From Octopus bimaculoides (Eukaryota): a stretch of 64,000 nucleotides of DNA. The notes under the pieces were generated by a model that saw only the letters and a list, made by a program, of their open reading frames with translations, made no database searches and was not told where the DNA came from. The first letter of the stretch is position 1. Each line of letters begins with the position of its first letter. The stretch lies in the NCBI RefSeq assembly GCF_001194135.2, contig NC_069007.1, positions 21,079,249-21,143,248 on the forward strand. Reading direction: 5' to 3'. This document shows positions 3,905 to 57,799 of this stretch, in pieces. A program made the translations under genes and the position numbers.

Positions 3905-4157
3905 ATGGTTACGGGTTCAGTTCCCACCTTGGGCATGTGTCTTCTATAGCCTCGGGCTACACAAAGCCTTGTGAGAGGATTTGGTAGACGGAAACTGAAA
4001 GAAACCCTTTGTATATAAATATGTGTGTGTGTGTGTGTGTGTCCAGTCACTGCTTGGAAGCTGGTGTTGTGTTTATGTTTCCGTAAGGTAGCGGTTCGAC
4101 AAAAGTGACCGATAGAATAAGTACCAGGCTTAAATGACTGAAACAAGTAAAAGAGTA
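3905..4157 (+). mobile_element. SINE fragment
   Basis: B-box-like ggttcagttccc, internal (GT)n, and tail gactgaaacaagtaaaagagt (the tail recurs at ~9783). Resembles abundant octopus SINEs from recall. Confidence 0.6.
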
Positions 4158-5058
4158 ATATGTATACAAGTTAGATATGGCATATGAGGGGACAGATTAG
4201 ATGAGATTAATTTTTCAAATAAAGTTTTGCATCAATAATTTATCAATACAGAAATGTAGGAAATATTCCTTGTTGCCATTTCTACAGTTTAAATGTATTC
4301 TCTATCTTATATTATTTCTGTTATTTCAGAATAATGGAATAATAGAATTGTTACAACAGAAACATCACCAGTATATTCATCATCTTTTAAAGACCATAGG
4401 AAGATTTTATACAGAATTGATATAACCGCGTTTAATAGGAAACTGAGGTAANNNNNNNNNNNNNNNNNNNNNNNNNNNNNNNNNNNNNNNNNNNNNNNNN
4501 NNNNNNNNNNNNNNNNNNNNNNNNNNNNNNNNNNNNNNNNNNNNNNNNNNNNNNNNNNNNNNNNNNNNNNNNNNNNNNNNNNNNNNNNNNNNNNNNNNNN
4601 NNNNNNNNNNNNNNNNNNNNNNNNNNNNNNNNNNNNNNNNNNNNNNNNNNNNNNNNNNNNNNNNNNNNNNNNNNNNNNNNNNNNNNNNNNNNNNNNNNNN
4701 NNNNNNNNNNNNNNNNNNNNNNNNNNNNNNNNNNNNNNNNNNNNNNNNNNNNNNNNNNNNNNNNNNNNNNNNNNNNNNNNNNNNNNNNNNNNNNNNNNNN
4801 NNNNNNNNNNNNNNNNNNNNNNNNNNNNNNNNNNNNNNNNNNNNNNNNNNNNNNNNNNNNNNNNNNNNNNNNNNNNNNNNNNNNNNNNNNNNNNNNNNNN
4901 NNNNNNNNNNNNNNNNNNNNNNNNNNNNNNNNNNNNNNNNNNNNNNNNNNNNNNNNNNNNNNNNNNNNNNNNNNNNNNNNNNNNNNNNNNNNNNNNNNNN
5001 NNNNNNNNNNNNNNNNNNNNNNNNNNNNNNNNNNNNNNNNNNNNNNNNNNNNNNNNNA

Positions 5059-22090: not shown

Positions 22091-22416
22091 ATTAAAAGTT
22101 AGAATTAATATCGTTTTTTTCTTTGTGGAGTGCTGCTTTAAGCACCTAATATCGTCACATTTTTTTATTTTGGGGAACTTTCAGAAATTTTTGCGTACGA
22201 GAATTCATTCGGTCATGCAAAAAAAAAACAAACTACGAGCTATTTAGCTGTTATTTTTCGCACATCCCACGACCACCTGATACCGTCCTAGTTTCTCGGT
22301 CACTGAGGGTTTTCGAGATCTTTTTCCACATAAATACATTCGTCGTAAATTTGCACTTTTGAATATCTACCTTTTAAACATATTTTATGCCTTATATTAT
22401 TTTTCTATTCTTTCAG

Positions 22417-22550
22417 ATAATCACATGAAATTGGCTAAAAAGTATTTTTTTACTTTTAAAGAATCTTCAATATGTATCATACTTGAAAGACTCTGCAAAG
22501 ATATTCTACAAACGTATAACCCTGCTTCTATAAAACGTTGCTGAATTACT
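22417..22550 (+). promoter_or_regulatory. Conserved leader block
   Basis: Acceptor 22415-6; the uORF ATG is ATA in this copy; GT at 22551. Confidence 0.55.
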
Positions 22551-22836
22551 GTGAAATATTTCCTCTGAGAGAGAAAGCATTTCTTTCCTTTAGTGTCTGA
22601 AATGTGCAAGAGACAATTTTCTGTTTTAAGTATACTTTGATGAATTTACAAAAGTATTTGCAACATTTCTAAATATTGATTAAGATCACATTTAGAAGAA
22701 AAGTGATATCTGTTTGGAATAAACTATAAAAGTAAAGAGAAGAAAAATATTGATATATTTTGGTGAGAGGAGAGACATTTTTGAAAAGTTATTCACGTGT
22801 AAAATTTGAAGGATTGGCTTTATTTTTCTTAAAGAG

Positions 22837-24126
22837 ATGTTGGAAGAATTAGGAAAATCATCACATGACTGTGACATCTGCAAAGAGTCATTCCTAGAAA
22901 AACGTAAATCCAATAAAAACCAAGAGATTCATACAAGTGAAGAACCATATCCCTGTGATATCTGTGGTAAATCATTGTCTGACAGGACAAGTTTAAATCA
23001 ACACAAACGTATTCATACAGGGGAGAAACCCTATCACTGTGATATCTGTGGTAAATCATTCTCTCAGAACAGTACCTTAACTCAGCACAAACGCATTCAT
23101 ACAGGTGAGAAACCATATTCCTGTGATATCTGTGGTAAATCATTCTCTGTTGGCAGTACTTTAACTAAACACCAACGTATTCATACAGGAGAGAAACCAT
23201 ATGATTGTGATATCTGTGGTAAATTATTCTATGAAAGAAGTAACTTAACTACTCATAAACGGATTCATACAGGGGAGAAACCGTATCCTTGTGATATCTG
23301 TGGTACATCATTCTCTCATCACAGTCATTTAATTCGACATACACGTATTCATACAGGTGAGAAACCATATCAGTGTCATATCTGTGGTAGATCATTCTCT
23401 GTTGGCAATAACTTAACTAAACACAAACGTATTCATACAGGTGAGAAACCATATTACTGTGATATCTGTGGTAAATCATTCTCTTCTGGAAGTGACTTAA
23501 TTGAACACAAACGTATTCATACAGGTGAGAAACCATATCACTGCGATATCTGTGGTAAATCATTCTCTTCTGGAAGTACCTTAACTAAACACAAACATAT
23601 TCATACAGGTGACAAACCATATCACTGTGATATCTGTGGTAAATCATTCTCTCTTGGCACTAACTTAAATAAACACAGACGTATTCATACAGGGGAGAAA
23701 CCATATCGCTGCGATATCTGTGGTAAATCATTTTCTGATGACAGTAGCTTAACTAAACATAAACGTATTCATACAGGAGAAAAACCATATCGCTGTGATA
23801 TCTGTGGTAAATCATTCTCTGATGGCAGTAGCTTAACTAAACACAAACGTATTCATACAGGGGAGAAACCATATCACTGTGATATCTGTGGTAGATCATT
23901 CTCTGAAAGCAGTAGCTTAACTACTCACAAACGTATTCATACAGGGGAGAAACCATATCGCTGTGATATCTGTGGTGCATCATTCTCTCAAAACAGTAGC
24001 TTAACTACCCATAAACGTATTCATTCAGGAGAGAAACCATATCACTGTGATATCTGTAATAAATCATTCTCTGAAAGTCGGCATTTAACTAGACATAAGC
24101 ATATTCATTCTGTAAAAAAATCCTAA
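22837..24126 (+). CDS. C2H2 zinc-finger protein, 429 aa, 14 intact + 1 degenerate finger
   Basis: Regular C2H2 repeats; starts MLEELGKSS. Confidence 0.95.
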
Positions 24127-27638: not shown

Positions 27639-28430
27639 ATGTCAGAAGAACTAGGAAAATCCTCATATGACTGTGACATCTGCAAAGACTCATTCTTAGA
27701 AGAAAGTAAATTCAATCAACACAAACAAATTCATACAGGGGAGAAACCATATCACTGTGATATCTGTGGTAAATCATTCAGTCGAAAAGGTAGCTTAGCT
27801 ACTCACAAACAGCTTCATACAGGGAAGAAACCATATAGCTGTGATATCTGTGGTAAATCATTCTCTAATGACGGTCACTTAACTCAACACAAACGTATTC
27901 ATACAGGAGAAAGACCTTATCCCTGTGATATCTGTGGTAAATCATTCTCTGATGGCAGTAACTTCATTCGACACAAACGTATTCATACGGGGGAGAAACC
28001 TTATAACTGTAGTATCTGTGGTAATTCATTCTCTAGTGACAGTCATTTAACTCGACACATACGTATTCATACAGGAGAGAAACCTTATCCCTGCGATATC
28101 TGTGGTGAATCATTCTCTGTTGGCAGTAGCTTAAATCGACACAAACGTATCCATACAGGGGAGAAACCATATCACTGTGATTTATGTGGTAAATCTTTCT
28201 CTGAAAATGGTAGCTTAACTCAACACAAACGTATTCATACGGGGGAGAAACCATATCACTGTAGTATCTGTGGTGAGTCATTCTATCACAGAGGTAATTT
28301 TACTACTCACTCAAGGATTCACACAGGGGAGAAGCCATATCACTGTGACATCTGTGATAAATCATTTTCTGTTAGTAGTTGCCTAACTAGACACAAGCGT
28401 ATTCATGCAGTGGAGAAACCCTCCCTGTGA
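27639..28430 (+). CDS. C2H2 zinc-finger protein, 263 aa, 9 fingers (A-type)
   Basis: Ends HRGNFTT / VSSCLTR / HAVEKPSL*, as does the 48380 gene. Confidence 0.95.
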   Translation: MSEELGKSSYDCDICKDSFLEESKFNQHKQIHTGEKPYHCDICGKSFSRKGSLATHKQLHTGKKPYSCDICGKSFSNDGHLTQHKRIHTGERPYPCDICGKSFSDGSNFIRHKRIHTGEKPYNCSICGNSFSSDSHLTRHIRIHTGEKPYPCDICGESFSVGSSLNRHKRIHTGEKPYHCDLCGKSFSENGSLTQHKRIHTGEKPYHCSICGESFYHRGNFTTHSRIHTGEKPYHCDICDKSFSVSSCLTRHKRIHAVEKPSL

Positions 28431-28467
28431 TATCAGTGGCAACTCATTCTATCAAAGAAACTACAGC

Positions 28468-28744
28468 CTAGAAGATGAGCCTTGTCTTGGAAGATCTGTA
28501 GAGCTCAACGAAAATCTCATACAAATCCTGGTGGAACAAAATCCCATCATAACTGTTGAGGAACTAGGAGAGAAGCTTTAATTTGGTCATTCAACCATTC
28601 ATGGGACACCTGTGCTACACGGAAAACAACCATCTTTGGTTTCAAGACAAAAGGTGTCCTTTCATAAGACTAATTCTCAAGTACACAGCAAGGACGACAT
28701 TCCAAAAGCTGGAGCAGTTTGAATGGGAAACGATGCCCCACCCA
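28468..28744 (+). mobile_element. mariner transposase remnant, internally deleted
   Basis: LEDEPCLGRSVELNE..LVEQNPIITVEELGEKL*FGHSTIH (HTH) joined to ..TARTTFQKLEQFEWETMPHP (just before YSPDL). Confidence 0.8.
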
Positions 28745-28809
28745 ATAATAGTGATTTATGAGGAAGAATTATCGAAGAAACGTTTTTCAAAAAATATCAA
28801 AAATATAAA

Positions 28810-29580
28810 ATACAGCCGTAATTCTTTAAAGACTAGAGTTAGTTCCCTTCACTCATAATTAAATCTTCCTAATTTTGGTTATTTCTTACGCATCTTTATT
28901 GCTTGATCAGTTCCACTTTACAACTGGTATTTAAGAGAAAACCCTATCAAAAATATATACACGATTGGTAATTAAATGTCTAAAGAAACAGATACAGCAT
29001 TTTTTTTTATTACGTTGACCTGAAAAATATGAATTAACGTTTCTTGTGAAAAGGAAGAAATTCTCTTGAAGTTGTCATTGTCCACTCTGAAGATGCTGAA
29101 GTAGTTCTCACTACTTCAACATATGATCACATCTTCCTCGCTGACTCTCTCTCTTTCTCTCTTCGCATATATATTACTATGTAAGTATTATATTTATAGA
29201 AACATTTCTATTGTATATATGTCATATTTCGTACATTTGCTTATTTCGATGTCAATAATCTCACTAAACAAAGACGAAATTATATGAAACTAAGGCTGTT
29301 CTTTTAATACTTTCATTGTGACCTTGTTTAGATAACATTTCTCTTTCTTTCTGACATGTAAATTTCACAATTAAGTTAATTGCAGGAAAATTACGATGTA
29401 ATTTTTGTAAAAAAAAAAAAAAAATGGGGAATGTGTAAAAGTATGCGTGTGCACTTGAAATACTGAAACGAAAAGACAATATCGTACACAGACGAAATGA
29501 ATGGGCTTTGAATTGAAACACTTGAAAGTACCTAATTTAACCAAAAATAAATATAAAAATCCGTTTATTTAATCTTTTAC
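28810..29580 (+). promoter_or_regulatory. Upstream cassette module of the 30597 gene
   Basis: GTAAGTA donor at 29181. Confidence 0.6.
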
Positions 29581-30186
29581 TCGAAAATTCGTAAATATAT
29601 ATTTTAAAAAATATCGACACGACATATAAAACGATGGCTGAGCGTCATTGATTAAAAACCATCCTCGTTTTTCGTTCAAATGGGTATCGATGTTTATCAA
29701 TATTACCCACCATGAGCGCATTAACACTGTTTCTTTGTAGCAACCCACGATGTTTTTAAATAAATCCGGTTATTACGCATGCGTAGGTCTTTTCTATCTG
29801 TGCATTAAATAGGCTTTGAAGCAGCCTCTCTACATGCTAGAAATAACAGCAATGATGGTGCTAGTCAGTCATCAAATGTTCGTTTCTTTTCTGACTATTC
29901 CTCGTGCTTCATGCTCCACAAAATATTGACATTAAGCTGCCCATATCCAAACCTGTGTTGATACGATAGAAGACTGAGATGAAAACATCAGATATCTAGT
30001 GTCACTGACATGTATTTTGGTGTGTGTGTGTGTGTCTAGGAGTTGTTATAATAATACATGTGTTCACTCTATGATATAAACTTCTTTAAAATGGTGAGAT
30101 TGGATAAGTTTAATGCTTCTACAATTTAGCAAAATAGAAGTGTCATAAATTTGCACTTGTCTTATCTTATTTTTCTATTCTTTCAG

Positions 30187-30319
30187 AAAATCACATAAAA
30201 TTGGCAAAAAAGTATTTTTTACTTTTAAAGAATCACCAATATGTATCATGTTTGAAAGACCCTGGAGAGATATTCTACAAACGTATAACCCTGCTTCTAT
30301 GAAACATGGCTGAATTATA
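30187..30319 (+). promoter_or_regulatory. Conserved leader block
   Basis: Acceptor 30185-6; uORF present; GT at 30320. Confidence 0.6.
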
Positions 30320-30596
30320 GTAAAATATTTCCACTGAGACAAAAAAACATTTCTTTACATCACTTTATGAAATGTGGAAGAGATAATTTTCTCTTTTTAA
30401 ATATACCTTGATGACTTTACAAAACTATTTGGAGCATTTCTAAATTTTTGACAATTAGCACATTTATAAATATAAAAGTTTGGTATGAAAATGAAAAAAA
30501 AGAAAAGTATCCATAAATTTTGGTAAAAGAAGAAATATTTTTGAAAGGCTCCTGATTGGTAAAAAATGAAGGATTGATTTTATTTTTCCAGAAAAG

Positions 30597-31550
30597 ATGT
30601 CGAAAGAAGCTGCAAAATCATCATATCACTGTGATATCTGTGGCAAATCATTCTCTAGTAACGCTAGATTAACTAGACACAAATGTATTCATACAGGAGA
30701 GAGACCATATCAATGTGATATCTGTGGTAAATCATTCATTGAGGGCAGTAACTTAACTAGACACAAACGTATTCATACAGGTGAGGAACCATATCACTGT
30801 GATATGTGTGGTAAATCATTCTCTGCTCGCAGTAACTTAACTACACACAAGCGTGTTCATACGGGGGAGAAACCATATCATTGTAATATCTGTGGTAAAT
30901 CTTTCTCTGTTGGCAGTAGCTTAAATACACACAGGCGTATTCATACAGGGGAGAAACCATGTACCTGCAATATCTGCGGGAAATCTTTTTCTGATGGCAG
31001 TAGCTTATATAAACACAGATGCATTCATACTGGGGAGAAACCATTTCACTGTGATATCTGTGGTAAATCATTCTCTGCAGGCAGTAGATTAACTACACAC
31101 AAACTAACTCATACAGGGGAGAAACCAAATCACTGTGATATCTGTGGTAAATCATTCTCTACTGGTAGTAACTTAACTACACACAGACGTATTCATACAG
31201 GGAAGAAACCATATCACTGTGATATCTGTGGCAAATCATTTAGTCACACAGGTAACTTAGGTACACACAAACGTATTCATACAGGTGAGCAGCCATATCA
31301 CTGTGATATCTGTGGTAAATCATTCAGTCAGATAGGCAACTTAACTAGACACAAACGTACTCATACAGGTGAGCAGCCATATCACTGTGATATCTGTGGT
31401 AAATCATTCTCTGAAAAGCGTATTGTAACTATACACAAACGTATTCATACTGGAGTAAAACCATATCATTGTGATATCTGCAGTAAATTATTCTCACAAA
31501 AACATCACTTAATTAAACACAAGTGCATTCGTTATGCAAAGGATCCATAA
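30597..31550 (+). CDS. C2H2 zinc-finger protein, 317 aa, 10 intact + 1 terminal degenerate finger (B-type)
   Basis: [12 protein letters not shown]...[17 protein letters not shown]. Confidence 0.95.
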   Translation: MSKEAAKSSYHCDICGKSFSSNARLTRHKCIHTGERPYQCDICGKSFIEGSNLTRHKRIHTGEEPYHCDMCGKSFSARSNLTTHKRVHTGEKPYHCNICGKSFSVGSSLNTHRRIHTGEKPCTCNICGKSFSDGSSLYKHRCIHTGEKPFHCDICGKSFSAGSRLTTHKLTHTGEKPNHCDICGKSFSTGSNLTTHRRIHTGKKPYHCDICGKSFSHTGNLGTHKRIHTGEQPYHCDICGKSFSQIGNLTRHKRTHTGEQPYHCDICGKSFSEKRIVTIHKRIHTGVKPYHCDICSKLFSQKHHLIKHKCIRYAKDP

Positions 31551-31867
31551 CATAGTGACATTTGTTGTATAACATTCCTTCAGGAAAACCTCTACACATG
31601 ATTGAAACTATATGAATGTGATATCTATAGGAAATCTTTCATCTCAGATCATCCATTAACTAATCAAAAGAGCATTGTCTGAGGAAGGAAAACACATGAA
31701 TGATATTAAACCTTAATCATTCTTTCAAAATGGTGAATTAATTCTACAGTCATATTAATATGAATGATATAACTATGCCTCAAGATATTTGTGCTGAATC
31801 AATCTATGAAAATGATAAATTATTAAAACAGAAATGCATTGATACAGAAGAGGAACCATATCACTAC

Positions 31868-32105
31868 GATAATGATGATGATCCTCATCATTTAAAATTC
31901 ACTTTTCCATTCTTCTGTGGATCAGATGGAATTCATTGATGGGGATTTTCTTCAGTCGGATGCCTTTCCTGTCACCCATCCTCAACTGTTTCCAAGGAAG
32001 GAAATATTTTCCATGGTGAGACATATTTTACACAGAAGACTGGAAATGAAGAATCGCATCTGTATGACGGTCATTATGGCCATTTACAAGCATCACGTGA
32101 TATCT
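31868..32105 (-). mobile_element. RTE-related SINE/LINE 3' end, antisense in the ZNF 3' region
   Basis: Minus strand ..gacaggaaaggcatccgactg..atggaaaagtg..ttaaatgatgaggatcatc; shared with four paralogs. Confidence 0.65.
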
Positions 32106-32345: not shown

Positions 32346-33025
32346 GTTCCTACTTGCAACATTGGCAAAAATTCAGAGAAAGCTGAAGTTCTTAGACAGT
32401 GCCGTTTCATTGTATGGGACGAATGCACAATGACCAATAAGGGTGCCCTTGAGGCACTGAACCGGTCACTGAAAGGTATCAGGGATTCTACAGCTTCTAT
32501 GGGTGGTGTAACTCTATTGCTTTCAGGAGATTTCTGGCAAATCCTTCCTGTCACCCCTAAAGGGAGCCGGGCTGATGATGTACACACATGCCTTAAGTCA
32601 TCCACGTTGTGGCCCCAAGTTAAGACCTTAAGCCTAAGCAGAAACATGCATGTGCACTTGCTTGGTGATAGCACGTCTGCAGTTTTAGCTGAAGACGTTT
32701 TAGTCTTTGGAGAAGGCAAGGTCCCTAGGAATGATAGGGGCGACATATCCGTCTCTGAACTGTGCAACACAGTGGACAACCCTTCTGATCTTTTGGAAAC
32801 AGTGTTCCCCATTCTGGAAAGTAACTATGGAGACATCAATTGGCTCAGTGAAAGAACCATCCTGGCCCCCAAAAACGTAGCTGTCAGTGCTATCAACAAC
32901 CAGCTCATAAGATGAATTCTGGGTGAGGAGCGCATCTACAAATCAATTGACCGGACCTCTGATCCCCAAGACATTGTCAATTACCCTATCGACTTTTTAA
33001 ACTCATTGGAACCGTCTGGGGTGTT
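32346..33025 (+). mobile_element. Helitron PIF1-like helicase remnant
   Basis: IVWDECTM (motif II), LLSGDFWQILPV (motif III), LSRNMHV, ILAPKN..V..IN (motif IV), stop, then YKSID..NYPIDFLNSLEPSG. Confidence 0.9.
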
Positions 33026-34900: not shown

Positions 34901-35371
34901 TGAAGATATAAAAAGAATATCGACACGACATATAAAATGATGGCTGATTGCTATTGTTTAAAAACTATCGCGTTGTGAAATTTAGTTTACTCGAATCAGT
35001 CACTAAGAACTCAGTTTTCGTGCTTGAAGGATCATTAACATTTTTATGTCCATTAAAGTATATGGGGCGATCTTTCGTTTTGATTTGGTTGGGGACGAGG
35101 AAAACGTGTGTGATTTAAGGGAGATTTAGCTATTGTTTCTAGCACGCGCAAGACCACAGTCGTTTTTCTCTCAAATATGTATTGATGTGCTTACATTGTA
35201 ACTGCCAAAATCTCCCCACAAATCTCTTTATAATCGTTTGTAAGGTATTACTAGAAAAGATATTCGTTTTCCTGAAGTTTACGAGGGGAAAAACGGATCG
35301 TAAATTTGCACTTTTGAATATCTACCTTTTAAACATATTTTATGCCTTATATTATTTTTCTATTCTTTCAG

Positions 35372-35505
35372 ATAATCACATGAAATTGGCAAAAGAGTAT
35401 TTTTTTACTTTTAAAGAATCACCAATATGTATCATGTTCGAAAGACTCTGCAAAGATATTCTACAAACGTATAACCCTGCTTCTATAAAACGTTGCTGAA
35501 TTACT
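35372..35505 (+). promoter_or_regulatory. Conserved leader block
   Basis: Acceptor 35370-1; uORF present; GT at 35506. Confidence 0.6.
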
Positions 35506-35874
35506 GTGAAATATTTCCTCTGAGAGAGAAAGCATTTCTTTCCTTTAGTGTCTGAAATGTGCAAGAGACAATTTTCTCTTCTAAATATTGACAAACATCA
35601 CATTTAGAAGAAATATAAGAGAAGTGATATATGTTTGGAATAATCTGTAAAAGAAGAAAAATAGCCATATATTTTGCTGAGAGNNNNNNNNNNNNNNNNN
35701 NNNNNNNNNNNNNNNNNNNNNNNNNNNNNNNNNNNNNNNNNNNNNNNNNNNNNNNNNNNNNNNNNNNNNNNNNNNNNNNNNNNNNNNNNNNNNNNNNNNN
35801 NNNNNNNNNNNNNNNNNNNNNNNNNNNNNNNGATGTGTACAACTTGAAGGATTGATTTTATTTTTCTTGAAAAG

Positions 35875-37248
35875 ATGTCAGAAGAATTAGGAAAATCCTC
35901 ACATGACTGTGACATCTGCAAAGAGTCATTCTTAGGAGAAAGTAAATTCAATCAACACAAACAAATTCATACAGGGGAGCAACCATATCACTGTAGTATC
36001 TGTGGTAAATCATTCTCAAATGACAGTCACTTAACTCGACACATATGTATTCATACTGGAGAGAAACCTTATCCCTGTGATATCTGTGGTAAATCATTGT
36101 CTGACAGGAATAGCTTAACTCAACACAAACGTATTCATACAGGGGAGAAACCATATCACTGTGAAGTCTGTGGTAAATCATTGTCTGACAGGAGTAGCTT
36201 CGCTCGACACAAACGCATTCATACGGGGGAGAAACCATATCACTGTGATATCTGTGGTAAATCATTCTCAAATGATGGTCACTTAACTCAACACAAACGT
36301 ATTCATACAGGAGAAAGACCTTATCCTTGTGATATCTGCGGTGAATCATTCTCTGTTAGCAGTAGCTTAATTCGGCACAAACGCATTCATACAGGAGAAA
36401 AACCATATCCTTGTGATATATGTGGTAAATCTTTCCCTGAAAACTGTAGCTTAACTCAACACAAACGTATTCATACGGGGGAGAAACCATATCATTGTAG
36501 TATCTGCGGTACTTCATTCTCCAATGACAGTCATTTAACTCGACACATACGTATTCATACAGGAGAGAAACCTTTTCCCTGTGATATCTGTGGTGAATCA
36601 TTCTCTGTTGGCAGTAGCTTAACTCGACATAAACGTATCCATACAGGGGAGAAACCATATCATTGTGACATTTGTGGTAAATCTTTCACTGAAAACAGTG
36701 GCTTAACTAAACATAAACGTATTCATACTGGGGAGAAACCATATCAGTGTGATATCTGTGGTGAATCATTCTCTCGTACTTATAGCTTAGATATTCACAA
36801 ACGTATGCATACAGGAGACAAAAAATACCACTGTGATGTCTGTGGTAAGTCATTCTCTGCTGGCAGTAGATTAACTACACACAAACTAATTCATATAGGG
36901 GAGAAACCATATCACTGTGATATATGTGGCAAATCATTCAGTCAGACAGGTAACTTAACTAGACACAAACGTATTCATACAGGTGAGCAACCGTTTCACT
37001 GTGATATCTGTGGTAAATCATTCAGTCAGACAGGCAACCTAACTACACACAAACGTACTCATACAGGTGAGCAACCATATCACTGTGATATCTGTGGCAA
37101 ATCATTCTCTGAAAAGGGTATCTTAACTACACACAAACTTATTCATACTGGAGTAAAACCATATCATTGTGATATCTGCAATAAATCATTCTCACAAAAA
37201 CATCACTTAATTAAACACAAGTGCATTCCTTATTCAAAGGATCCATAA
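35875..37248 (+). CDS. C2H2 zinc-finger protein, 457 aa, 15 intact + 1 terminal degenerate finger (A/B chimera)
   Basis: N-terminal half resembles 27639/48380; C-terminal half resembles 30597/41775. Confidence 0.95.
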
Positions 37249-37607
37249 GTACAGTGACATTTGTTGTATAAAATTCCCTCAGAAGGATAGGCTTGTACCT
37301 CTCCTGTTTCCAAGCAAGGAAATAATTTTCACAGCAAGACATATTTTACACAGAAGACTGGAAATGAATAACTGCATCTGTATGACGGTCATTATGGCCA
37401 TTTACAAGCATCACATGATATCTGGACAATGGTACACTCACAGACACTGATGCACACATATGTATGTCTTGAGAATTTTACTTGTTTTATGTACATGTAA
37501 ATGAAACACATGTAATGCTGAATAAATAATATGAAAGTCTTCTCCAGTCTCCTTATGTTATACGTAATTACTCTGCAAAAAATATCCAAATCTCCCACAA
37601 AAATAAA

Positions 37608-37664
<57 letters not shown>
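37608..37664. repeat. (CA)n(TA)n microsatellite
   Basis: Directly visible. Confidence 0.9.
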
Positions 37665-38079
37665 NNNNNNNNNNNNNNNNNNNNNNNNNNNNNNNNNNNN
37701 NNNNNNNNNNNNNNNNNNNNNNNNNNNNNNNNNNNNNNNNNNNNNNNNNNNNNNNNNNNNNNNNNNNNNNNNNNNNNNNNNNNNNNNNNNNNNNNNNNNN
37801 NNNNNNNNNNNNNNNNNNNNNNNNNNNNNNNNNNNNNNNNNNNNNNNNNNNNNNNNNNNNNNNNNNNNNNNNNNNNNNNNNNNNNNNNNNNNNNNNNNNN
37901 NNNNNNNNNNNNNNNNNNNNNNNNNNNNNNNNNNNNNNNNNNNNNNNNNNNNNNNNNNNNNNNNNNNNNNNNNNNNNNNNNNNNNNNNNNNNNNNNNNNN
38001 NNNNNTATATATTTAGATTCAGGGGAATATGGTACTTAAGTTTAGGCAACAGAATTTAGTATTGGTATGATCCATACAA

Positions 38080-38574
38080 TTTCAAAGTGATTAAAATCAA
38101 AATAAGCAACAAGGATATCCAGAAGTAATGCAGTACGATCATTTCATGAAACTCCATTTAATTGAACAATGCAACCATTACATCAATTTAAAATGCAGAG
38201 CAATCCTCAGCTGCACAAAGACATAGAATTTAATTAAATTAGAACAGATGAACACATTAGTATAATACCTAAAATCTCCAAGAAGTTTGGGAGACAGACA
38301 GATAACATCTTGCTTTAGCCACACCATGAAAGCTAAAGCAAGATGTTCTCTGTCTGTCTCCCTAACCTCTGGGAGATTTTAGGTATTATTATACTAATGT
38401 GACCATCTGTTCTAATTTAATTAAATTCTATGTCTTTGTGCAGCTGAGGATTGCTCTGCATTTTAAATTGATGTAATGATTACATTGTTCAATTAAATGG
38501 AGTTGCATGAAACGATTGTACTGCATTACATCTGGATATCCTCGTTGCTTATTTTGATTTTAATCACTTTGAAA
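38080..38574. mobile_element. ~495-bp near-perfect palindrome (foldback MITE-like)
   Basis: Arms of ~240 bp (tttcaaagtgattaaaatc... / ...gattttaatcactttgaaa) around the loop cacaccatgaaa. Confidence 0.8.
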
Positions 38575-38766
38575 GCTATAGAGCACTGAACAGTGAGAAG
38601 ATATAATAAAAAGAGAAAAAAGACGGCGCCTATTGTGTTGTGAGGAATTGGATGTAGGCGGATGCCAATTATATTTAAAGAAAGCTAAATCTATGAATGC
38701 TATAAAAAATCAAATAACCATCTTTTTCTTAAATAGGTCCTCTTAATTTTTTCATTAATAATAAAC

Positions 38767-38930
38767 TAAGGTGGCTGTCTGGCAGGATCGTTAGCATATT
38801 GAGCAAAGTGCCTAGCTGGGTTCTTCTGACATCACTTGTGCCTTTAAATTCTGCCAAAATGGCCTTTATCTTTCATTCAGAGGTGGGGGGGGGTGATGCA
38901 AATAAGCACCAGTTGAGCACTGGAGTTGAC
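38767..38930 (+). mobile_element. Decayed tRNA-derived SINE
   Basis: Paralog at 45866-46030; related to 25008. Confidence 0.55.
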
Positions 38931-39059
38931 ATAATCAATTCAACACTGCCCATGGAATTGCTGGCCTTGTGCCAATATTTGAAAACAATATTAATTCCAG
39001 TCTCTTATCTTCTCTCTTGCCCGGTGGAAATGCCATGACCATGTTGGCTTGTTCCTGGA

Positions 39060-39850
39060 GATTAGTTCCCCTTGCTCATAGTTCATTCTTCCGAATTCTG
39101 TTTATTTCTTGCTCTCGTTTCTTACGCATCTTAATTGCTTGATCAGTTCCACTTTACAACTGATATTTAAGAGAAACCCAATCAGAAATATGTACATGTT
39201 TGGTAATTAACTGTCTAAAGAAACAGATACAGCATTTTTTATTACGTTGACCTGAAAAATTTGAAGTAACGTTTGTTGTGAAAAGGAAGAAATTCAGTTG
39301 AAGCTGTCATTGTCCACTCTGACTCCTTGACTCTCTCTCTATATATTATTATGTAAGTATTGTATGAACATTTCTATTCTATATGTGTCATATTATGTAC
39401 ATCTGTTTGTTTCCATGTGTTGAATAAGTTAAAAGAAAGAATCTCACGAAACAAACACGAAATTATATGAAAGCAAGGCTGTTCTTTTAATACTTTCATT
39501 GTGATATTTTCTTTTCGATATTTCATCGCACTTGTGGTTACACCTTCCGTATCGTCGTTATTTCCTATGTTTGTTAATGTTAGATTAATACCTTGTTTAA
39601 ATAACATTTCTCTTTCTTTTTGACATGTAAATTTGACAATTTAGTTAAATGCGGAAAAATTACGATGTAATTTGTCAGAAACAATGGGGAATGTGTAAAA
39701 GTACGAGTGTGCACTTGAAATACTGAAACGAAAAGGCACTATCGTATACAGACGAAATGAAACGGCGTTGAATTAAAACACTAGAAAATATCTAATTTGA
39801 TGAAAATTACATATAAATACCCGTTTATATAATGTTACTCGAAAATTACT
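39060..39850 (+). promoter_or_regulatory. Upstream cassette module of the 41775 gene
   Basis: GTAAGTA donor at 39353. Confidence 0.6.
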
Positions 39851-41341
39851 AGGTGAAGATAGAAAAAGAATATCGACACGACATATAAAATGATGGCTGA
39901 TTGCTATTGTTTAAAAACTATCGCGTTGTAAAATTTAGGTTACTCTAATCAATCACTAAGAACTCAGTTTTCGTACTTGAAGCATTATAAACATTTTTAT
40001 GTCCATTAAAATATATAGACATTATAATAATGAAGAGTCTGTAGAATGGTTTTGTGGTTTCAAAATTTTATACTTAGGAAATACAAAACCGAATTAAGAG
40101 GAAACATTATCTTAATTGAGTTATATGTAATTAAAAAAAGAACAATAAATGTAAAAGCCAATAAATTGTCGATGGAAAGTCTCCAAGGTAACTAAACCCT
40201 TAGATTTATTATCACGGAACTGAGTAGATCAGGATTACAAAGAAATTTGTGGACAAAAGTTTTTGGTAGGGGACGAGGTTAAAGTGTGTGGTTGAAGGGA
40301 GATTTGGCTGTTGTTTCTAGCACGTGCAAGACGACCCTCGTTTTTCTTTCAAATGTGTATTTGATGTTTTTCAACATTACCCCACCATGGACGCATTTAT
40401 GCTAAAAAAAACTTGTAAAATTTGAAGGCGGACCGACACCACAATCTCATCCCGTTTTTTGGGGGTTTCTTTGTAGATTCCGAACCTGTAAAAAAAAAAA
40501 TTGGCATTTCAAAATTTCACCCCTCCAAATTTCTTCATTTTTCACTCTTTTCAGACTTTTTTTTTTTGTGTGTGAAATACGTGGAAAAATACAGAGATTA
40601 TGATTCTGAAACAAATTTTTCTTTTTTTTTAAATTTCAATTAAAAAAAAAAAAGAACAATAAATAAAAGTAAATAGTATCCTCCCCTCCCCTTTGCGAAT
40701 GTACGGCTATGCGTAGGTGTTTTCTATCTGCATGAAATAGGCTTTGGAGCAGCCTCTTCCTATGCTAGAAATAACAGCCAAATCGCCGACAAGCTCTACA
40801 TACTTTGCAGGCAATCCTACACAATCGTACCCCATTGACTTTGTGAAATTTGTGGTCCTTATGAAAATTTACAGCATTAATTATTAAACATTGATGTTTG
40901 TTTCTCATAAAATGGTATATATTTAATTGACATTAAATTATTATTTACGATTATTTAAGGTACACACAACCTGCAAATCTTTGTCAGTTTAATGTTTTTG
41001 TATTTAATTTCGAATTGCATATGTTCGTCAATTCACTACGATCTCTCTAAAGTAAATAAAATCAAAAATTTATATTTGTGGTGGAGATGAAATTAACTTT
41101 TTTTTTTTTTTTTGCATATTCGTAGTTTTTGACATCTAAAGCGTAGGAATGTCCAGGAAGTGTCATGATAGATGTGTCTATAATAGAAACTTCTTGAAAA
41201 TAGAGAGACGGGATAAATTTAATAGTTTAGATAGAGGATACCTTCAACAATTTATGAAAACAGAAATGTCGTAAATTTGCACTTTTGAATATCTACTTTT
41301 AAACATACTCTATGTCTTATCTTATTTTTCTATTCTTTCAG

Positions 41342-41476
41342 AAAATCATATGAAATTGGCTAAAAAATATTTTTTTTACTTTTAAAAAATCACCAATATG
41401 TATCATGTTTGAAAGACCCTGGAAAGATATTCTACAAACGTATAACCTTGCTTCTATGAAACATGCCTGAATTATA
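41342..41476 (+). promoter_or_regulatory. Conserved leader block
   Basis: Acceptor 41340-1; uORF present; GT at 41477. Confidence 0.6.
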
Positions 41477-41774
41477 GTAAAATATTTCCACTGAGACAAA
41501 AAAACATTTCTTTACTTCACTATATGAAATGTGGAAGAGATAATTTTCTCTTTTTAAATATACCTTGTTGAATTTACAAAACTATTTGGAGCATTTCTAA
41601 ATTTTGACAATTAACACATTTACAAGAAATATAACAAAAGTAATATTTGTTTGGTATGAACTATGAAAACGAAAAAGAAGGAAAATATCCATAAATTTTG
41701 GTAAAAGAAGAAATATTTTTGAAAGGCTCTTGATTGGTAAAAGATGAAGGATTGATTTTATTTTTCCTGAAAAG

Positions 41775-43148: not shown

Positions 43149-43467
43149 CATAGTGACATTTGTTGTATAACATTCCTTCAGGAAAACCTCTACACATGAT
43201 TGAAACTATGTTATGAATGTGATATCTATAGTAAATCTTTCATCTCAGATTATCCATTAACTAATCAAAAGAGCATTGACAGAGGAAGGTAAACATGACT
43301 GATATTAAACCTTAATCATTCTTTCAAAATGGTGAATTAATTCTACAGTCATATTAATATGAAAGATATAACTATGCCTCAAGATATTTATGCTTAATTA
43401 ATCTATGAAAATGATCAATTATTGAAACATAAATGCATTGATACAGAAGAGGAACCATATCACTACG

Positions 43468-43695
43468 ATAATGATGATGATCCTCATCATTTAAAATTCA
43501 CTTTTCCATTCTTCTGTGGATCAGATGGAATTCATTGATGGGGATTTTCTTCAGTCGGATGCCTTTCCCATCACCCATCCTCAACTGTTTCCAAGCAAGG
43601 AAATATTTTCCATGGTGAGATATATTTTACACAGAAAACTAGAAATGAAGGACTGCATCTGTATGATGGCCATTTACAAGCTTCACGTGATATCT
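43468..43695 (-). mobile_element. RTE-related insertion, paralog of 31868
   Basis: Near-identical to 31868-32105. Confidence 0.65.
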
Positions 43696-47805: not shown

Positions 47806-48054
47806 AGACGAAAACATCAGATATCTAGTGTCATTGACATGTATATTGGTGTGTGTGTCTATAACAGAACTTATGTCCTGGAGATGTTATTATAATATAT
47901 AAACTTCTTGAAAATAGAGAGATGGGATAAGTTTAAAAGTTCAGTTAAAGGATTCCTTCTACAATTTATGAAAACAGAAATGTCGTAAATTTGCACTTTT
48001 GAATATCTACCTTTTAAACATTTTTGGCCTTATATTATTTTTCTGTTCTTTCAG

Positions 48055-48188
48055 AAAATCACATGAAATTGGCAAAAGAGTATTTTTTTACTTTTAAAGA
48101 ATCACCAATATGTATCATGTTCGAAAGACTCTGCAAAGATATTCTACAAACGTATAACCCTGCTTCTATAAAACGTTGCTGAATTACT
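48055..48188 (+). promoter_or_regulatory. Conserved leader block
   Basis: Acceptor 48053-4; uORF present; GT at 48189. Confidence 0.6.
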
Positions 48189-48379
48189 GTGAAATATTTC
48201 CTCTGAGAGAGAAAGCATTTCTTTCCTTTAGTGTCTGAAATGTGCAAGAGACAATTTTCTCTTCTAAATTTTGACAAACATCACATTTAGAAGATATATA
48301 AGAGAAGTGATATATGTTTGGAATAATCTGTAAAAGAAGAAAAATAGCCATATATTTTGCTGAGAGAANNNNNNNNNNC

Positions 48380-49870
48380 TCAAATGACAGTCACTTAACT
48401 CGACACATACGTATTCATACTGGAGAGAAACCTTATCCCTGTGATATCTGTGGTAAATCATTGTCTGACAGGAATAGCTTAACTCAACACAAACGTATTC
48501 ATACAGGGGAGAAACCGTATGGCTGTGATATCTGTGGTGAATCATTCTCTGTTGGCAGTACCTTAAATCGACACAAACGTATCCATACAGGGGAGAAACC
48601 ATATCACTGTGATTTATGTGGTAAATCTTTCTCTGAAAACTGTAACTTAACACAACACAAACGTATTCATACGGGGGAAAAACCATATCACTGTGATGTC
48701 TGTGGTAAATCATTGTCTGATAGGAGTAGCTTCACTCGACACAAACGTATGCATACAGGAGAGAAACCATATCACTGTGATGTCTGTGGTAAATCTTTCT
48801 CTGAAAATGGTAACTTAACTCAACACAAACGTATTCATACGGGGGAGAAACCATATCACTGTGATATCTGTGGTAAATCATTCTCTGAGGGCAGTCACTT
48901 AACTCAACACAAACGTATTCATACAGGAGAAAAACCTTATCCCTGTGATATCTGTGGTGAATCATTCTCTGTTACAAGTAGCTTAAATCGACACAAACGT
49001 ATCCATACAGGAGAGAAACCATATCACTGTGATTTATGTGGTAAATCTTTCCCTGAAAACTGTAGCTTAACTCAACACAAACGTATTCATACAGGAGAAA
49101 GACCTTATCCCTGTGATATCTGTGGTAAATCATTCTCTGGGGGCAGTCACTTAACTCAACACAAACGTATTCATACAGGAGAAAGACCTTATCCCTGTGA
49201 TATCTGTGGTAAATCATTCTCTGATGGCAGTAACTTCATTCGACACAAACGTATTCATACGGGGGAGAAACCTTATAACTGTAATATCTGTGGTAAATCA
49301 TTCTCTGAGGGCAGTCACTTAACTCAACACAAATGTATTCATACAGGAGAAAAACCTTATCCCTGTGATATCTGTGGTGAATCATTCTCTGTTAAAAGTA
49401 GCTTAAATCGACACAAACGTATCCATACAGGAGAGAAACCATATCACTGTGATTTATGTGGTAAATCTTTCTCTGAAAATGGTAGCCTAACTCAACATAA
49501 ACGTATTCATACGGGGGAGAAACCTTATAACTGTAGAATCTGTGGTAATTCATTCTCTAGTGACAGTCATTTAACTCGACACACACGTATTCATACAGGA
49601 GAGAAACCGTATGGCTGTGATATCTGTGGTGAATCATTCTCTGTTGGCAGTAGCTTAAATCGACACAAACGTATTCATACAGGGGAGAAACCATATCACT
49701 GTGGTATCTGTGGTGAATCATTCTATCACAGAGGTAACTTTACTACTCACTCAAGGATTCACACAGGGGAGAAGCCATATCACTGTGACATCTGTGATAA
49801 ATCATTCTCTGTTAGTAGTTGCCTAACTAGACACAAGCGTATTCATGCAGTGGAGAAAACCTCCCTGTGA
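48380..49870 (+). CDS. C2H2 zinc-finger protein (A-type), at least 18 fingers, start lost in a 10-N gap
   Basis: Both flanks of the gap match the 35875 locus, so the MSEELGK start was probably collapsed. Ends HAVEKTSL*. Confidence 0.9.
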
Positions 49871-52964: not shown

Positions 52965-53200
52965 AAATATCACATGATGTTTGTAAACGGCCATCATGAG
53001 TGTCATGCAAATGCAGTCGTTCATTTCCAGTCTTCTGCATAAAATATGTCTCACCATGGAAAATATTTCCTTGCTTAGCAACAGGTGAGGATGGGTGACG
53101 GGAAAGGCATCCAGCTGAAGAAAATCCCCATCAATGAATTCTATCTGATCCATAGAAGCATGGAAAAATGAAGGTTAAATGATGAGGATCATTATATCAT
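52965..53200 (+). mobile_element. RTE-related insertion, paralog of 31868
   Basis: Antisense to the 53689 gene, same relative position. Confidence 0.65.
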
Positions 53201-53559
53201 AGTGATATGGTTCCTCTTCTGTATCAATGCATTTCTGTTTTAATAATTGATCATTTTCATAGATTGATTTAGCACGAATAGCTTAGGTTATGGTTATATC
53301 TTTCATATTTAATATGACTGTAGAATTAATTCACCATTTTGAAAGAATGATTAAGGTTTAATATCGCAGTGATATGTTTTCCTTCCTCAGTCAATGCTCT
53401 TTTGATTTGTTAATAGATCATTTCAAATGAAAGATTTACTATAGATATCACATTCATATAGTTTCTATCATGTGTAGAGATTTTTCTGAGGCACAAGCTT
53501 GTCCTTCTGAGGGAATTTTATAAAACAAATGTCACTGTACTTATGGATCCACTTGTTTT

Positions 53560-53688
53560 TAATCAAGTGATGATTTTGTGAGAAAATATTTTATTGCAGA
53601 TATCAAAAAGGTTTATGGTTTTACTCCAGTATGAATACGTTTGTGTGTAGTTAAGCTTCTTTTTTCAGAGAATGATTTACCATAGATA
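53560..53688 (-). pseudogene. Two fossil fingers after the stop of the 53689 gene
   Basis: [17 protein letters not shown] and QNHHLIKNK, equivalent to the last B-type fingers. Confidence 0.75.
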
Positions 53689-54591
<903 letters not shown>

Positions 54592-56182: not shown

Positions 56183-56372
56183 AAGCAATGTCCAGGAGTT
56201 GCTATTATAATTATTGTATCTGCTCATAATTTATTAACTTTTGGAAAAGTTCACATGCAGGTTGGTTTACTTCTACAATTCATTAAAACAGAAATGACAT
56301 AAATTTGCATTTTTGAATATCTACCTTTTAAACATATTCTATGTCTTATATTATTTTTTTGTATTCTTTCAG

Positions 56373-56507
56373 AAAATCACATGAAATTGGCTAAAAAGTA
56401 TTTTTTTTACTTTTAAAGAATCACCAATATGTATCATGTTCGAAAGACTCTGCAAAGATGTTCTACAAACGTATAACCAGGCTTCTATAAAACGTTGCTG
56501 AATTACA
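56373..56507 (+). promoter_or_regulatory. Conserved leader block
   Basis: Acceptor 56371-2; uORF present; GT at 56508. Confidence 0.6.
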
Positions 56508-56662
56508 GTAAAATCTTTCCTCTGAGAGAATTATAATGAAAGTGAGATTTGTTTGAAATAAACTATAAAAATAGAAAGAAAAATATTTTGGTGAGAAAAG
56601 ACCTTCTTGGAAAATTACTGACATATAAAACTTAAAGGATTGATTTTATTTTTCCTGAAGAG

Positions 56663-57689
<1,027 letters not shown>

Positions 57690-57799
57690 CAAAACCATAA
57701 TTTAACTAAACACAGGCATATACATACAGAAAATCATCGCTGAATTAAACACAAGTGCATTCCTTATTAATTGGATTCATAGCACAGTGATGTTTGTTC

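What the first reader, a model, noticed from the sequence alone, without database searches (positions are those of the whole stretch)
35875..37248. Chimeric zinc-finger gene: A-type front fused to B-type back
The leader and fingers 1-10 (ESKFNQ, NDSHLTR, DRNSLTQ, DRSSFAR, NDGHLTQ, V.SSL.R, ENCSLTQ) match 27639/48380. Fingers 11-16 ([27 protein letters not shown] x2, EKGILTT, QKHHLIK..KDP) and the 3' flank match 41775/30597/53689. The switch lies near 36700-36780. This is direct evidence that crossover within the shared 84-bp scaffold creates new arrays, i.e. a recombinational route to new DNA-binding specificities.
Basis: seen in the sequence. Interest (0 to 1): 0.7.

Follow-up and report, generated by a model that had tools for sequence, protein, structure and literature searches.

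The report
Hybrid zinc-finger gene in octopus cluster
One 16-finger zinc-finger gene in an Octopus bimaculoides gene cluster really is a front-of-type-A, back-of-type-B mosaic, most likely made by unequal crossing-over between neighbouring paralogs, which is an expected way for such families to evolve, and it rests on a short-read draft contig that could not be checked independently.

Summary
ORF 35875-37248 (457 aa, 16 C2H2 fingers) has a leader and fingers 1-10 closest to the A-type genes (27639, 48380). Fingers 11-16, the tail and the 3' flank are closest to the B-type genes (41775, 30597, 53689). The switch is single and in frame, and it lies at 36697-36775 (maximum chi-square 93.6, 0 of 5000 permutations). 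Trees of the two ends are strongly incongruent. Synonymous sites and non-coding flanks show the same split, so it reflects ancestry, not convergence.

The window is Octopus bimaculoides chromosome record CM046627.1, in one of the known tandem C2H2 clusters. The best explanation is in-register unequal crossing-over between an A-type and a B-type paralog, within the conserved linker part of the 84-bp unit.

"Direct evidence" overstates it. No parental copies are present (dS 0.09-0.18 to the nearest relatives). The gene sits on a 1.8-kb short-read contig between N gaps. No ortholog or independent molecule could be retrieved.

Recombination-driven remodelling of poly-zinc-finger arrays is well known in vertebrates. 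This is a new example of a known kind, of modest interest.

The parts
35298..35683 (+). Conserved upstream block, likely promoter plus non-coding 5' exon. It ends at a splice-donor position, which reads GC in this gene and in 48380 but GT in the other paralogs.
   Evidence: 98.2% identical to 47983-48366 (upstream of 48380), 96.6% to the block upstream of 22837, and about 87% to those of 27639 and the B genes. The alignment of 8 paralogs shows about 190 nearly invariant bases and a GGTGAG/GGTAAA donor about 66 nt before each ATG. All reading frames there carry stops (read from the sequence).
35684..35831 (.). Scaffold gap of 148 N. The real missing sequence is probably about 24 nt.
   Evidence: Gap list. 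In the paralog alignment, the sequences on either side of the gap are separated by about 24 nt in the other genes.
35832..35874 (+). End of a short 5'-UTR intron: a pyrimidine tract and an AG acceptor directly before the ATG.
   Evidence: 'ttgattttatttttcttgaaaag|ATG' is conserved in all eight paralogs examined.
35875..37248 (+). Complete ORF of the hybrid gene (457 aa, 16 fingers, stop included). It contains only C2H2 domains.
   Evidence: Pfam finds zf-H2C2_2 and zf-C2H2 only, with no KRAB, SCAN or BTB. It is called as a 457-aa gene in GCA_001194135.2.
35875..36741 (+). A-type part: leader [12 protein letters not shown] plus fingers 1-10.
   Evidence: Per-finger identities. Leader block is 94.4% identical to 27639 versus 73-78% to the B genes. 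F10 is nearest to the gene's own F7.
36015..36152 (+). Tract nearly identical to 48380 (137 of 138 bases). It ends abruptly at the TGEKP linker, after which 48380 carries two extra fingers.
   Evidence: Exact matches of 31 and 106 bp. The pairwise alignment shows a sharp drop in identity after 36152.
36697..36775 (+). Exchange interval: the end of the finger-10 helix, H-x3-H, the TGEKP linker and the beta-hairpin of finger 11.
   Evidence: Maximum chi-square break at 36763/36775. Unit alignments show the A-type 'EN' signature up to 36696 and the B-type 'RTYSLDI' signature from 36775. In between there is only one A-like site (G at 36763, giving GESFS) and one B-like site (AAA Lys at 36709).
36742..37248 (+). 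B-type part: fingers 11-16 and the tail ...[10 protein letters not shown].
   Evidence: 90-96% identical to units of 41775 and 30597. Tail block is 95.8% and 95.0% identical to 41775 and 30597 versus 61% to the A genes, with 100% bootstrap.
37249..37664 (+). B-type 3' flank. It lacks the roughly 400 bp of decayed relic fingers that follow the stop codon in the B genes (deletion point near 37297). It ends in a (CA)n(TA)n microsatellite at the gap.
   Evidence: In the 3' flank tree, X groups with the three B genes against C and D in 99.7% of bootstraps. It shares a 21-nt segment with 53689 that 41775 and 30597 lack.
37665..38005 (.). Scaffold gap of 341 N that closes the 1833-bp contig carrying the gene.

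Best explanation
The gene is a hybrid made by non-allelic homologous recombination (unequal crossing-over). The partners were an A-type and a B-type C2H2 zinc-finger paralog lying in the same orientation in this tandem cluster of Octopus bimaculoides.

The 84-bp finger units were misaligned but in register. The exchange fell in the part of the unit that is nearly identical between families: the helix end, H-x3-H, the TGEKP linker and the beta-hairpin (36697-36775). The product keeps the A-type 5' UTR intron end, leader and ten A-type fingers. It gains six B-type fingers, the B-type tail and the B-type downstream flank.

An A gene directly followed by a B gene about 3 kb downstream exists next door (27639 then 30597). 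A Lepore-type deletion between such a pair would give exactly this structure.

The protein is an uninterrupted 16-finger array with no effector domain. It is inferred to read a composite DNA site: an A-type half-site next to a B-type half-site.

Shown here: the mosaic, its single in-frame boundary, and the concordant 3' flank. Inferred: crossing-over as the process, the deletion-type geometry, the age of the event, and any change of binding specificity.
For: - Source: the window is O. bimaculoides GCA_001194135.2, record CM046627.1.
- Mosaic: per-finger labels are A x10 then B x6. Maximum chi-square is 93.6 with 0 of 5000 permutations reaching it.
- Incongruent ends: leader X+A27639 87% with the B clade excluding X 100%; tail X+B 100%.
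- Synonymous sites: dS splits the same way, so this is ancestry and not convergence on amino acids.
- Flanks: the 3' flank groups with the B genes (99.7% bootstrap against C/D) and is absent downstream of the A genes. The longest downstream match (38574-40379, 1.8 kb, 87%) is to the region downstream of B41775. Everything 3' of the break is therefore B context, as a crossover predicts.
- Complementary content: X has none of the last two A fingers and none of the first five B fingers. That fits a single exchange.
- Parsimony: all three B genes share the B leader and both A genes share the A tail, so X is most simply the derived recombinant.
- A second boundary: another sharp, in-register boundary at a linker (36152/36153) and a two-finger length difference relative to 48380 show that such exchanges recur here.
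- Not a join of two assembled window genes: both halves differ from every window copy (dS 0.175 and 0.085), and finger 10 is unique in the window.
Against: - The contiguous sequence carrying the junction is only 1833 bp, bounded by N gaps, in an assembly whose contigs come from short-read shotgun data.
- Artefactual 100%-identical duplications next to gaps occur elsewhere in the window.
- No parental copies, no reciprocal product (B front with A back) and no ortholog were found. The exact protein occurs only in this assembly.
- Whether the B-type half is nested within the B clade relative to 53689 has only 61% bootstrap support.
- The upstream block is so conserved among paralogs that it discriminates types poorly: 98% to 48380, but 97% to 22837 and 87% to 27639.
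Confidence: 0.62

Rival explanations
1. Assembly chimera. The short-read assembler, or its gap-closing step, walked from a real A-type gene into a real B-type gene through the shared linker sequence. This collapsed the A 3' end, the intergenic DNA and the B 5' end, about 3 kb as in the 27639-30597 pair.
For: - The gene lies on a 1833-bp stretch between N gaps.
- The v2 assembly re-uses the earlier shotgun contigs with Hi-C scaffolding (PMC9068888).
- The switch lies exactly where the two families share their longest identical words (33-39 bp).
- The contiguous sequence also runs through a 106-bp exact repeat shared with 48380, so repeats were resolved by some heuristic.
- X and 48380 both break into gaps at the same homologous base, 35683 and 48368.
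- Perfect duplicates abut gaps at 1-4451.
- A collapse would give the same flanks as a true deletion.
Against: - Within the window, no copy shares more than 39 bp with the junction region, and the core of finger 10 shares at most 28 bp.
- The distance from the A signature to the B signature is only about 111 bp, which a single read or a small-insert pair could span.
- Both halves are distinct from all assembled window copies, so two further otherwise unassembled genes would be needed.
- Copies elsewhere in the genome could not be checked.
Confidence: 0.2
2. Long-tract gene conversion. An A-type gene at this position had its 3' part overwritten by copying from a B-type paralog, with no change in gene number.
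For: - Gene conversion among poly-ZF paralogs is documented (PMC2604467).
- A clear short tract of near identity exists in this same gene: 36015-36152 is 137/138 identical to 48380, and together with the upstream block at 98% it suggests a tract of about 0.85 kb.
Against: The B-type sequence runs from the break through the stop codon and the whole assembled 3' flank, at least 890 bp. The best downstream match beyond the gap is again to B-gene surroundings, to about +3.1 kb. No return to A-type sequence is seen. That is long for a conversion tract and is what a crossover predicts.
Confidence: 0.1
3. X keeps an ancestral layout (A-type leader with B-type tail), and the A and B families are the derived ones. 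A would have acquired a new 3' end and B a new 5' end.
For: - Gene 22837 also combines an A-like leader and first finger (94% to X F3) with mostly B-like fingers and a tail nearer to B (74%) than to A.
- The A tail groups with that of the unrelated gene 12105.
- The nesting of X's 3' flank inside the B clade is weak, at 61%.
Against: - It needs two replacement events and two unknown donors instead of one exchange.
- X is 92-96% identical to the B genes in the back and 89-99% to the A genes in the front, while 22837 is only 74-84% identical at either end. X's halves are therefore young relatives of A and B, not a deep intermediate.
- This reading still requires recombination.
Confidence: 0.06
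4. No exchange at all. The resemblance of the two halves to different families comes from chance or from convergent selection on recognition residues.
For: Fingers of all families share a strongly conserved scaffold, so background identity is high (about 80-90%).
Against: The split holds with recognition codons removed, at framework synonymous sites and in the non-coding 3' flank. The permutation and bootstrap tests agree.
Confidence: 0.01

Closest known systems
Lepore-type hybrid genes (delta-beta globin fusions) formed by unequal crossing-over between tandem paralogs. This comparison rests on established textbook knowledge, not on a tool result.
   Same: - The 5' part and leader region come from one paralog, and the 3' part and downstream flank from the next.
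- There is one in-frame junction, in a stretch where the two paralogs are nearly identical.
- The two parental types lie adjacent and in the same orientation (27639 then 30597).
   Different: - Here the misalignment is between internal 84-bp repeats, so the exchange also sets a new repeat number and order.
- The parents and the reciprocal product are not identified.
- The event is old, not a segregating variant.
Array remodelling in vertebrate poly-zinc-finger (KRAB-ZFP) gene clusters: finger gain and loss by recombination, and gene conversion among tandem paralogs (Emerson & Thomas 2009, PMC2604467; Kauzlaric et al. 2017, PMC5363842).
   Same: - Tandem clusters of lineage-specific C2H2 genes.
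- The whole finger array sits in a single exon.
- Paralogs differ in finger number.
- Short conversion tracts are present.
- Recombination is proposed as a fast route to new binding specificity.
   Different: - The octopus genes carry no KRAB, SCAN or BTB domain. The ORF is array only, preceded by a non-coding 5' exon.
- The expansion is independent of the vertebrate one.
Octopus and coleoid C2H2 expansions in large tandem clusters (Albertin et al. 2022, PMC9068888; Holzinger et al. 2025, PMC12513265).
   Same: Same species and the same kind of locus. The window is part of such a cluster, with at least 11 array genes in 64 kb.
   Different: Those studies describe gene counts, phylogeny and expression. 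The 2025 paper contains no mention of recombination, gene conversion or chimeric genes. A specific inter-subfamily hybrid is not described there.
PRDM9 zinc-finger minisatellite arrays.
   Same: The period is 84 bp, exchanges between finger repeats are in register, and they change the predicted DNA target.
   Different: - As recalled from the literature, PRDM9 units are nearly identical outside the contact codons and turn over within one gene. This was not tested here.
- Here, units within the gene are only 57-90% identical, and the exchange is between different genes.

Membership tests
Krueppel-type C2H2 poly-zinc-finger gene | Tandem C-x2-C-x12-H-x3-H units joined by TGEKP-like linkers, with an 84-bp period. 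| tested here: met
   15 canonical fingers plus 1 degenerate terminal finger. TRF finds period 84 with 14.8 copies. Pfam zf-H2C2_2 has E = 2.8e-137 and zf-C2H2 E = 1.9e-82.
KRAB-ZFP (vertebrate type) | An N-terminal KRAB (or SCAN/BTB) effector domain. | tested here: not met
   No PF01352, SCAN or BTB hit in X, 27639 or 41775. The upstream exon has stops in all frames (sequence), and the ORF starts at the first codon of the array exon.
Hybrid gene from unequal crossing-over (Lepore type) | The 5' part and its adjoining non-coding sequence derive from parent type 1. | tested here: met
   The leader block, which includes 43 nt of intron, is 94.4% identical to 27639 versus 73-78% to the B genes, and groups with 27639 in 87% of bootstraps. 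F2-F3 is 137/138 identical to 48380. The far-upstream block is only weakly diagnostic.
Hybrid gene from unequal crossing-over (Lepore type) | The 3' part and the downstream flank derive from parent type 2, with no return to type 1. | tested here: met
   Tail block groups with the B genes in 100% of bootstraps. The 3' flank groups with the B genes in 99.7% and has no match downstream of the A genes. The best match beyond the gap is to the region downstream of B41775.
Hybrid gene from unequal crossing-over (Lepore type) | A single in-frame junction inside sequence shared by both parents. | tested here: met
   There is one switch among 16 fingers. The break lies at 36697-36775, in the linker and beta-hairpin region. 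The ORF is intact.
Hybrid gene from unequal crossing-over (Lepore type) | Identifiable parental genes or a reciprocal product. | tested here: not met
   The nearest relatives differ by dS 0.175 (A) and 0.085 (B). No gene in the window has a B front and an A back. The rest of the genome could not be searched.
Hybrid gene from unequal crossing-over (Lepore type) | The junction is present on real single DNA molecules or transcripts. | not testable with these tools
   No reads are available. The exact protein is found only in GCA_001194135.2, and the contig is bounded by gaps.
Gene conversion tract | A donor-like segment bounded on both sides by recipient-type sequence. | tested here: not met
   Only one boundary is seen. 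B-type sequence continues to the contig end and beyond the gap. In contrast, the 36015-36152 tract shared with 48380 has a sharp 3' boundary at 36152/36153. With the upstream block at 98% and lower identity further upstream, it looks like a bounded conversion tract.
PRDM9-like minisatellite array | Near-identical repeat units within one array. | tested here: not met
   Pairwise unit identity within X is 57-90%.

The most novel reading that the evidence does not exclude
Octopus lineage-specific C2H2 clusters may diversify by frequent in-register exchanges at the conserved linker between paralogs of different subfamilies. New finger orders would then be assembled from blocks of existing fingers. 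This 64-kb window alone would record several such events:
- the A/B hybrid;
- a tract of about 0.85 kb that is 98-99% identical between X and 48380 and ends exactly at a linker;
- a two-finger length difference at that same point;
- a possible older mosaic in gene 22837.

This would be an invertebrate parallel, without KRAB domains, to array shuffling in vertebrate KRAB-ZFP clusters.
Probability: 0.45. Interest if true: 0.4.

Novelty: new member of a known kind. Interest (0 to 1): 0.25.

Why it matters
If the junction is real, it is a clean, dated example of array shuffling in octopus. The independently expanded C2H2 family of cephalopods would then use the same recombinational route to new finger combinations, and so plausibly to new DNA targets, that is inferred for vertebrate poly-ZF genes. 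It would also matter for how these clusters are analysed. Gene trees built on whole arrays would be misleading for mosaic genes. Automatic gene models in this region already fuse neighbouring genes. The finding does not change the accepted picture of how such families evolve.

Tried and rejected
1. Whole-protein homolog search. Long vertebrate poly-ZF proteins at about 50% identity swamped the results, and no close relative was listed.
2. Exact look-up of six window proteins. None was reported in the collection.
3. Leader-plus-tail composite query, meant to find proteins with both an A leader and a B tail. It gave only 4 weak, unrelated hits.
4. Exhaustive search of cluster representatives. 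Giant multi-finger proteins dominated, the best identity was 59%, and nothing usable as an ortholog came up.
5. Synteny through the neighbouring Helitron helicase fragment. Its O. sinensis relatives were fetched. L003 shares only the transposon with this region and holds no related zinc-finger gene. L004 could not be read in that script, and only the helicase gene is called on it.
6. Exact look-up of the hybrid protein across public assemblies. It occurs only in the source assembly, so this gives no independent support.
7. Rfam scan of the window. No RNA family was found, so the conserved upstream block is not a known RNA.
8. A multiple alignment of 416 nt after each stop codon. It misled because the B genes carry about 400 bp of relic fingers that X lacks. 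It was replaced by local alignments.
9. Biopython's built-in support values on a re-rooted tree looked inconsistent. Split frequencies were recomputed directly.
10. Albertin et al. 2015 could not be opened. The assembler and read lengths are therefore known to me only from memory and are not used as evidence.

Full report
**What the window is**

The 64-kb window is eukaryotic draft sequence with about 32% G+C, 19 runs of N and many microsatellites. A PIF1/Helitron helicase fragment at 32430-32915 has its closest relatives in Octopus bimaculoides and O. sinensis. The look-up of that ORF, and of the focal ORF itself, places the window on O. bimaculoides GCA_001194135.2, chromosome record CM046627.1. 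Window base 1 is record base 21,079,249. [quoted passage not shown]

The window holds at least 11 C2H2 zinc-finger array genes: 5071+, 12105-, 16793+, 22837+, 27639+, 30597+, 35875+, 41775+, 48380+, 53689- and 56663+. It is part of one of the known tandem C2H2 clusters of coleoid cephalopods (PMC9068888, PMC12513265).

**Gene anatomy**

ORF 35875-37248 encodes 457 aa. It has a short leader, 15 canonical fingers and a degenerate terminal finger, all in 84-bp register. Pfam finds only C2H2 families, with no KRAB, SCAN or BTB domain.

In every paralog the ATG is directly preceded by a pyrimidine tract and AG. About 66 nt further upstream there is a GT donor, which reads GC in this gene and in 48380. 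It sits at the end of a roughly 190-bp block that is almost invariant among paralogs and has stops in all frames. The array exon therefore most likely follows a non-coding 5' exon, and the ORF is the whole protein. This agrees with the 457-aa gene call in the record.

The gene lies on a 1833-bp stretch (35832-37664) between two N gaps. Judged from the paralog alignment, the upstream gap hides only about 24 nt.

**Check of the observation**

At the DNA level, each of fingers 1-9 is closer to an A-type unit (27639 or 48380; 89-99%) than to any B-type unit (74-91%). Each of fingers 11-16 is closer to a B-type unit (90-96%) than to any A-type unit (68-86%). Finger 10 is ambiguous against other genes (87% versus 86%), but it is closest to the gene's own A-type finger 7 (89%).

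Nearest-neighbour labels read A x10 then B x6. The control genes are homogeneous: A genes match A or the front of X, and B genes match B or the back of X. The chance of at most one switch is 2.5e-4.

On 217 informative sites the maximum chi-square is 93.6, with the break between 36763 and 36775. The counts are 98:27 on the left and 11:81 on the right, and none of 5000 permutations reached this value. The unit alignments show the last firm A signature ending at 36696 and the first firm B signature starting at 36775. I therefore give the exchange interval as 36697-36775: the helix end, H-x3-H, the TGEKP linker and the next beta-hairpin.

**Ancestry, not convergence**

The pattern holds in three independent places.
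- Framework codons only. With recognition codons removed, A beats B for fingers 1-5 and 7-9 (finger 6 ties at .917, and finger 10 is ambiguous here as well). B beats A for fingers 12-16 (finger 11 ties at .900).
- Framework synonymous sites. For the front, dS is 0.18 to A and 0.32 to B. For the back, dS is 0.07 to B and 0.39 to A.
- Non-coding sequence. The leader block, which includes 43 nt of intron, is 94% identical to 27639 and 73-78% to the B genes. The tail block is 95-96% identical to 41775 and 30597 and 61% to the A genes.

Bootstrap split frequencies agree. In the leader block, X groups with 27639 in 87% and the B clade excludes X in 100%. In the tail block, X groups with 30597 and 41775 in 100% and with the A genes in 0%.

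The 3' flank 37298-37650 has homologs downstream of the B, C and D genes but none downstream of either A gene. In a tree it groups with the three B genes against C and D in 99.7% of bootstraps. Beyond the downstream gap, the longest match (38574-40379, 1.8 kb, 87%) is to the region downstream of 41775. The far-upstream block is less informative: it is 98.2% identical to that of 48380, but also 96.6% to that of 22837 and only about 87% to that of 27639.

**Most likely origin**

X contains none of the last two A-type fingers and none of the first five B-type fingers. It is exactly "A front plus B back". All three B genes share the B leader and both A genes share the A tail. One in-register exchange between an A and a B paralog explains this.

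Because the sequence stays B-like from the break through the stop, the flank and beyond, a crossover fits better than a bounded conversion tract. An A gene followed 3 kb later by a B gene in the same orientation exists next door (27639 then 30597). A deletion-type (Lepore-like) unequal crossover in such a pair would give this gene with these flanks. This geometry is an inference.

The event is not recent relative to the copies at hand. The halves differ from their nearest window relatives by dS 0.175 and 0.085 and by 12% in the 3' flank. X has also lost about 400 bp of relic fingers that follow the stop codon in the B genes. dN/dS is 0.24 in the front and 0.69 in the back, on small counts. The ORF is intact, so the gene is probably functional. 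Expression was not tested.

**More exchange in the same gene**

Bases 36015-36152 are 137/138 identical to 48380, and the upstream block is 98% identical. Identity collapses exactly at the next linker (36152/36153), where 48380 carries two additional fingers. This looks like a recent conversion or duplication tract of about 0.85 kb with an in-register boundary. It supports the general idea that the conserved scaffold is where exchanges resolve.

**The main caveat**

The junction is in short-read sequence on a small contig between gaps.
- X and 48380 both break into gaps at the same homologous base (35683 and 48368).
- The contiguous sequence passes through a 106-bp exact repeat.
- Perfect duplicates abut gaps at 1-4451.
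- A collapse of an adjacent A-B pair would mimic a true deletion.

Against an artefact:
- No window copy shares more than 39 bp with the junction region.
- Finger 10 is unique in the window.
- The A-to-B signatures are only about 111 bp apart.
- Both halves differ from all assembled window copies.

Copies elsewhere in the genome could not be examined. I put the artefact at about 0.2.

**External evidence**

None could be obtained. The protein searches were saturated by generic poly-ZF proteins or found nothing close. The exact protein exists only in the source assembly. The O. sinensis loci reached through the Helitron fragment are not syntenic as far as they could be checked: L003 shares only the transposon, and L004 could not be read.

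**Comparison with what is known**

Recombination-mediated gain and loss of fingers, and gene conversion among tandem poly-ZF paralogs, are established for vertebrates (PMC2604467; PMC5363842). The logic is that of Lepore-type hybrid genes. The octopus genes differ in lacking an effector domain and in belonging to an independent expansion. The recent cephalopod C2H2 study does not discuss recombination.

**Verdict**

It is a new member of a known kind, with interest about 0.25.

Noticed in passing
window 36015-36152 and 35298-35683 versus 48379-48516 and 47983-48366: X and gene 48380 share a tract that is 98-99% identical (137/138 in fingers 2-3, 98.2% upstream). It ends exactly at a TGEKP linker, where 48380 has two extra fingers. 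Both copies also break into N gaps at the same homologous base (35683 and 48368). This is either a recent conversion or duplication tract, or a repeat-induced assembly break.
   Followed up: partly
window 27639-31550 and 41775 onward (L001 5210-9121 and 19346+): The gene calls on the source record fuse neighbouring array genes. A 522-aa product spans 27639 to 31550; the only single GT-AG intron that fits is 28264-30606, joining the A gene to the B gene. A 954-aa product starts at 41775 and presumably runs into 48380. These could be read-through transcripts or prediction artefacts, which was not resolved.
   Followed up: partly
window 35340-35530 and homologous blocks upstream of every paralog (e.g. 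22343-22633, 41269-41561, 56300-56529): A block of about 190 bp, some 350-550 bp upstream of each ATG, is almost invariant among paralogs whose coding arrays are only about 75-90% identical. It carries stops in all frames and matches no Rfam family. It may be a shared promoter or 5'-UTR exon kept uniform by selection or by conversion.
   Followed up: partly
window 43149-43578, 31551-31980, 53100-53690 (- strand): In the B genes the stop codon is followed by about 400 bp of decayed, frame-broken relic fingers, so the B tail arose by truncation of a longer array. X lacks this segment, with the deletion point near 37297 at a short CCTC repeat.
   Followed up: partly
window 53380-53800 (- strand) and 57280-57760: Gene 53689 ends in a premature stop after finger 10, followed by out-of-frame remnants of the B-type last fingers. 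Gene 56663 changes frame between 57368 and 57450 and contains a repeated 3-finger module. Both are probably pseudogenes or carry assembly errors.
   Followed up: partly
window 1-4451: Perfect or near-perfect duplicates abut N gaps. 1-205 matches 3721-3517 (inverted, 100%). 1417-1623 matches 4451-4245 (inverted, 100%). 1-403 matches 2348-2750 (98.5%). These are typical of redundant contigs in a draft scaffold and are a warning about local assembly quality.
   Followed up: no
window 22837-24126: Gene 22837 has an A-like leader and a first finger 94% identical to X finger 3. Its later fingers are nearest to B-type units (85-94%), and its tail is nearer to B than to A. It could be an older mosaic or an intermediate lineage.
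   Followed up: no
window 32430-32915: A fragment of a PIF1-type (Helitron-like) helicase ORF lies between genes 30597 and 35875. It is 76-84% identical to many O. bimaculoides and O. sinensis copies, and it was what allowed the source organism to be identified.
   Followed up: yes
window 35672-35683 and 48357-48368: At the presumed 5'-UTR splice donor, X and 48380 read TTTTGCTGAGAG (GC), where the other paralogs read GGTGAG or GGTAAA (GT). This may be a GC-AG intron or a weakened donor. The effect on expression is unknown.
   Followed up: no
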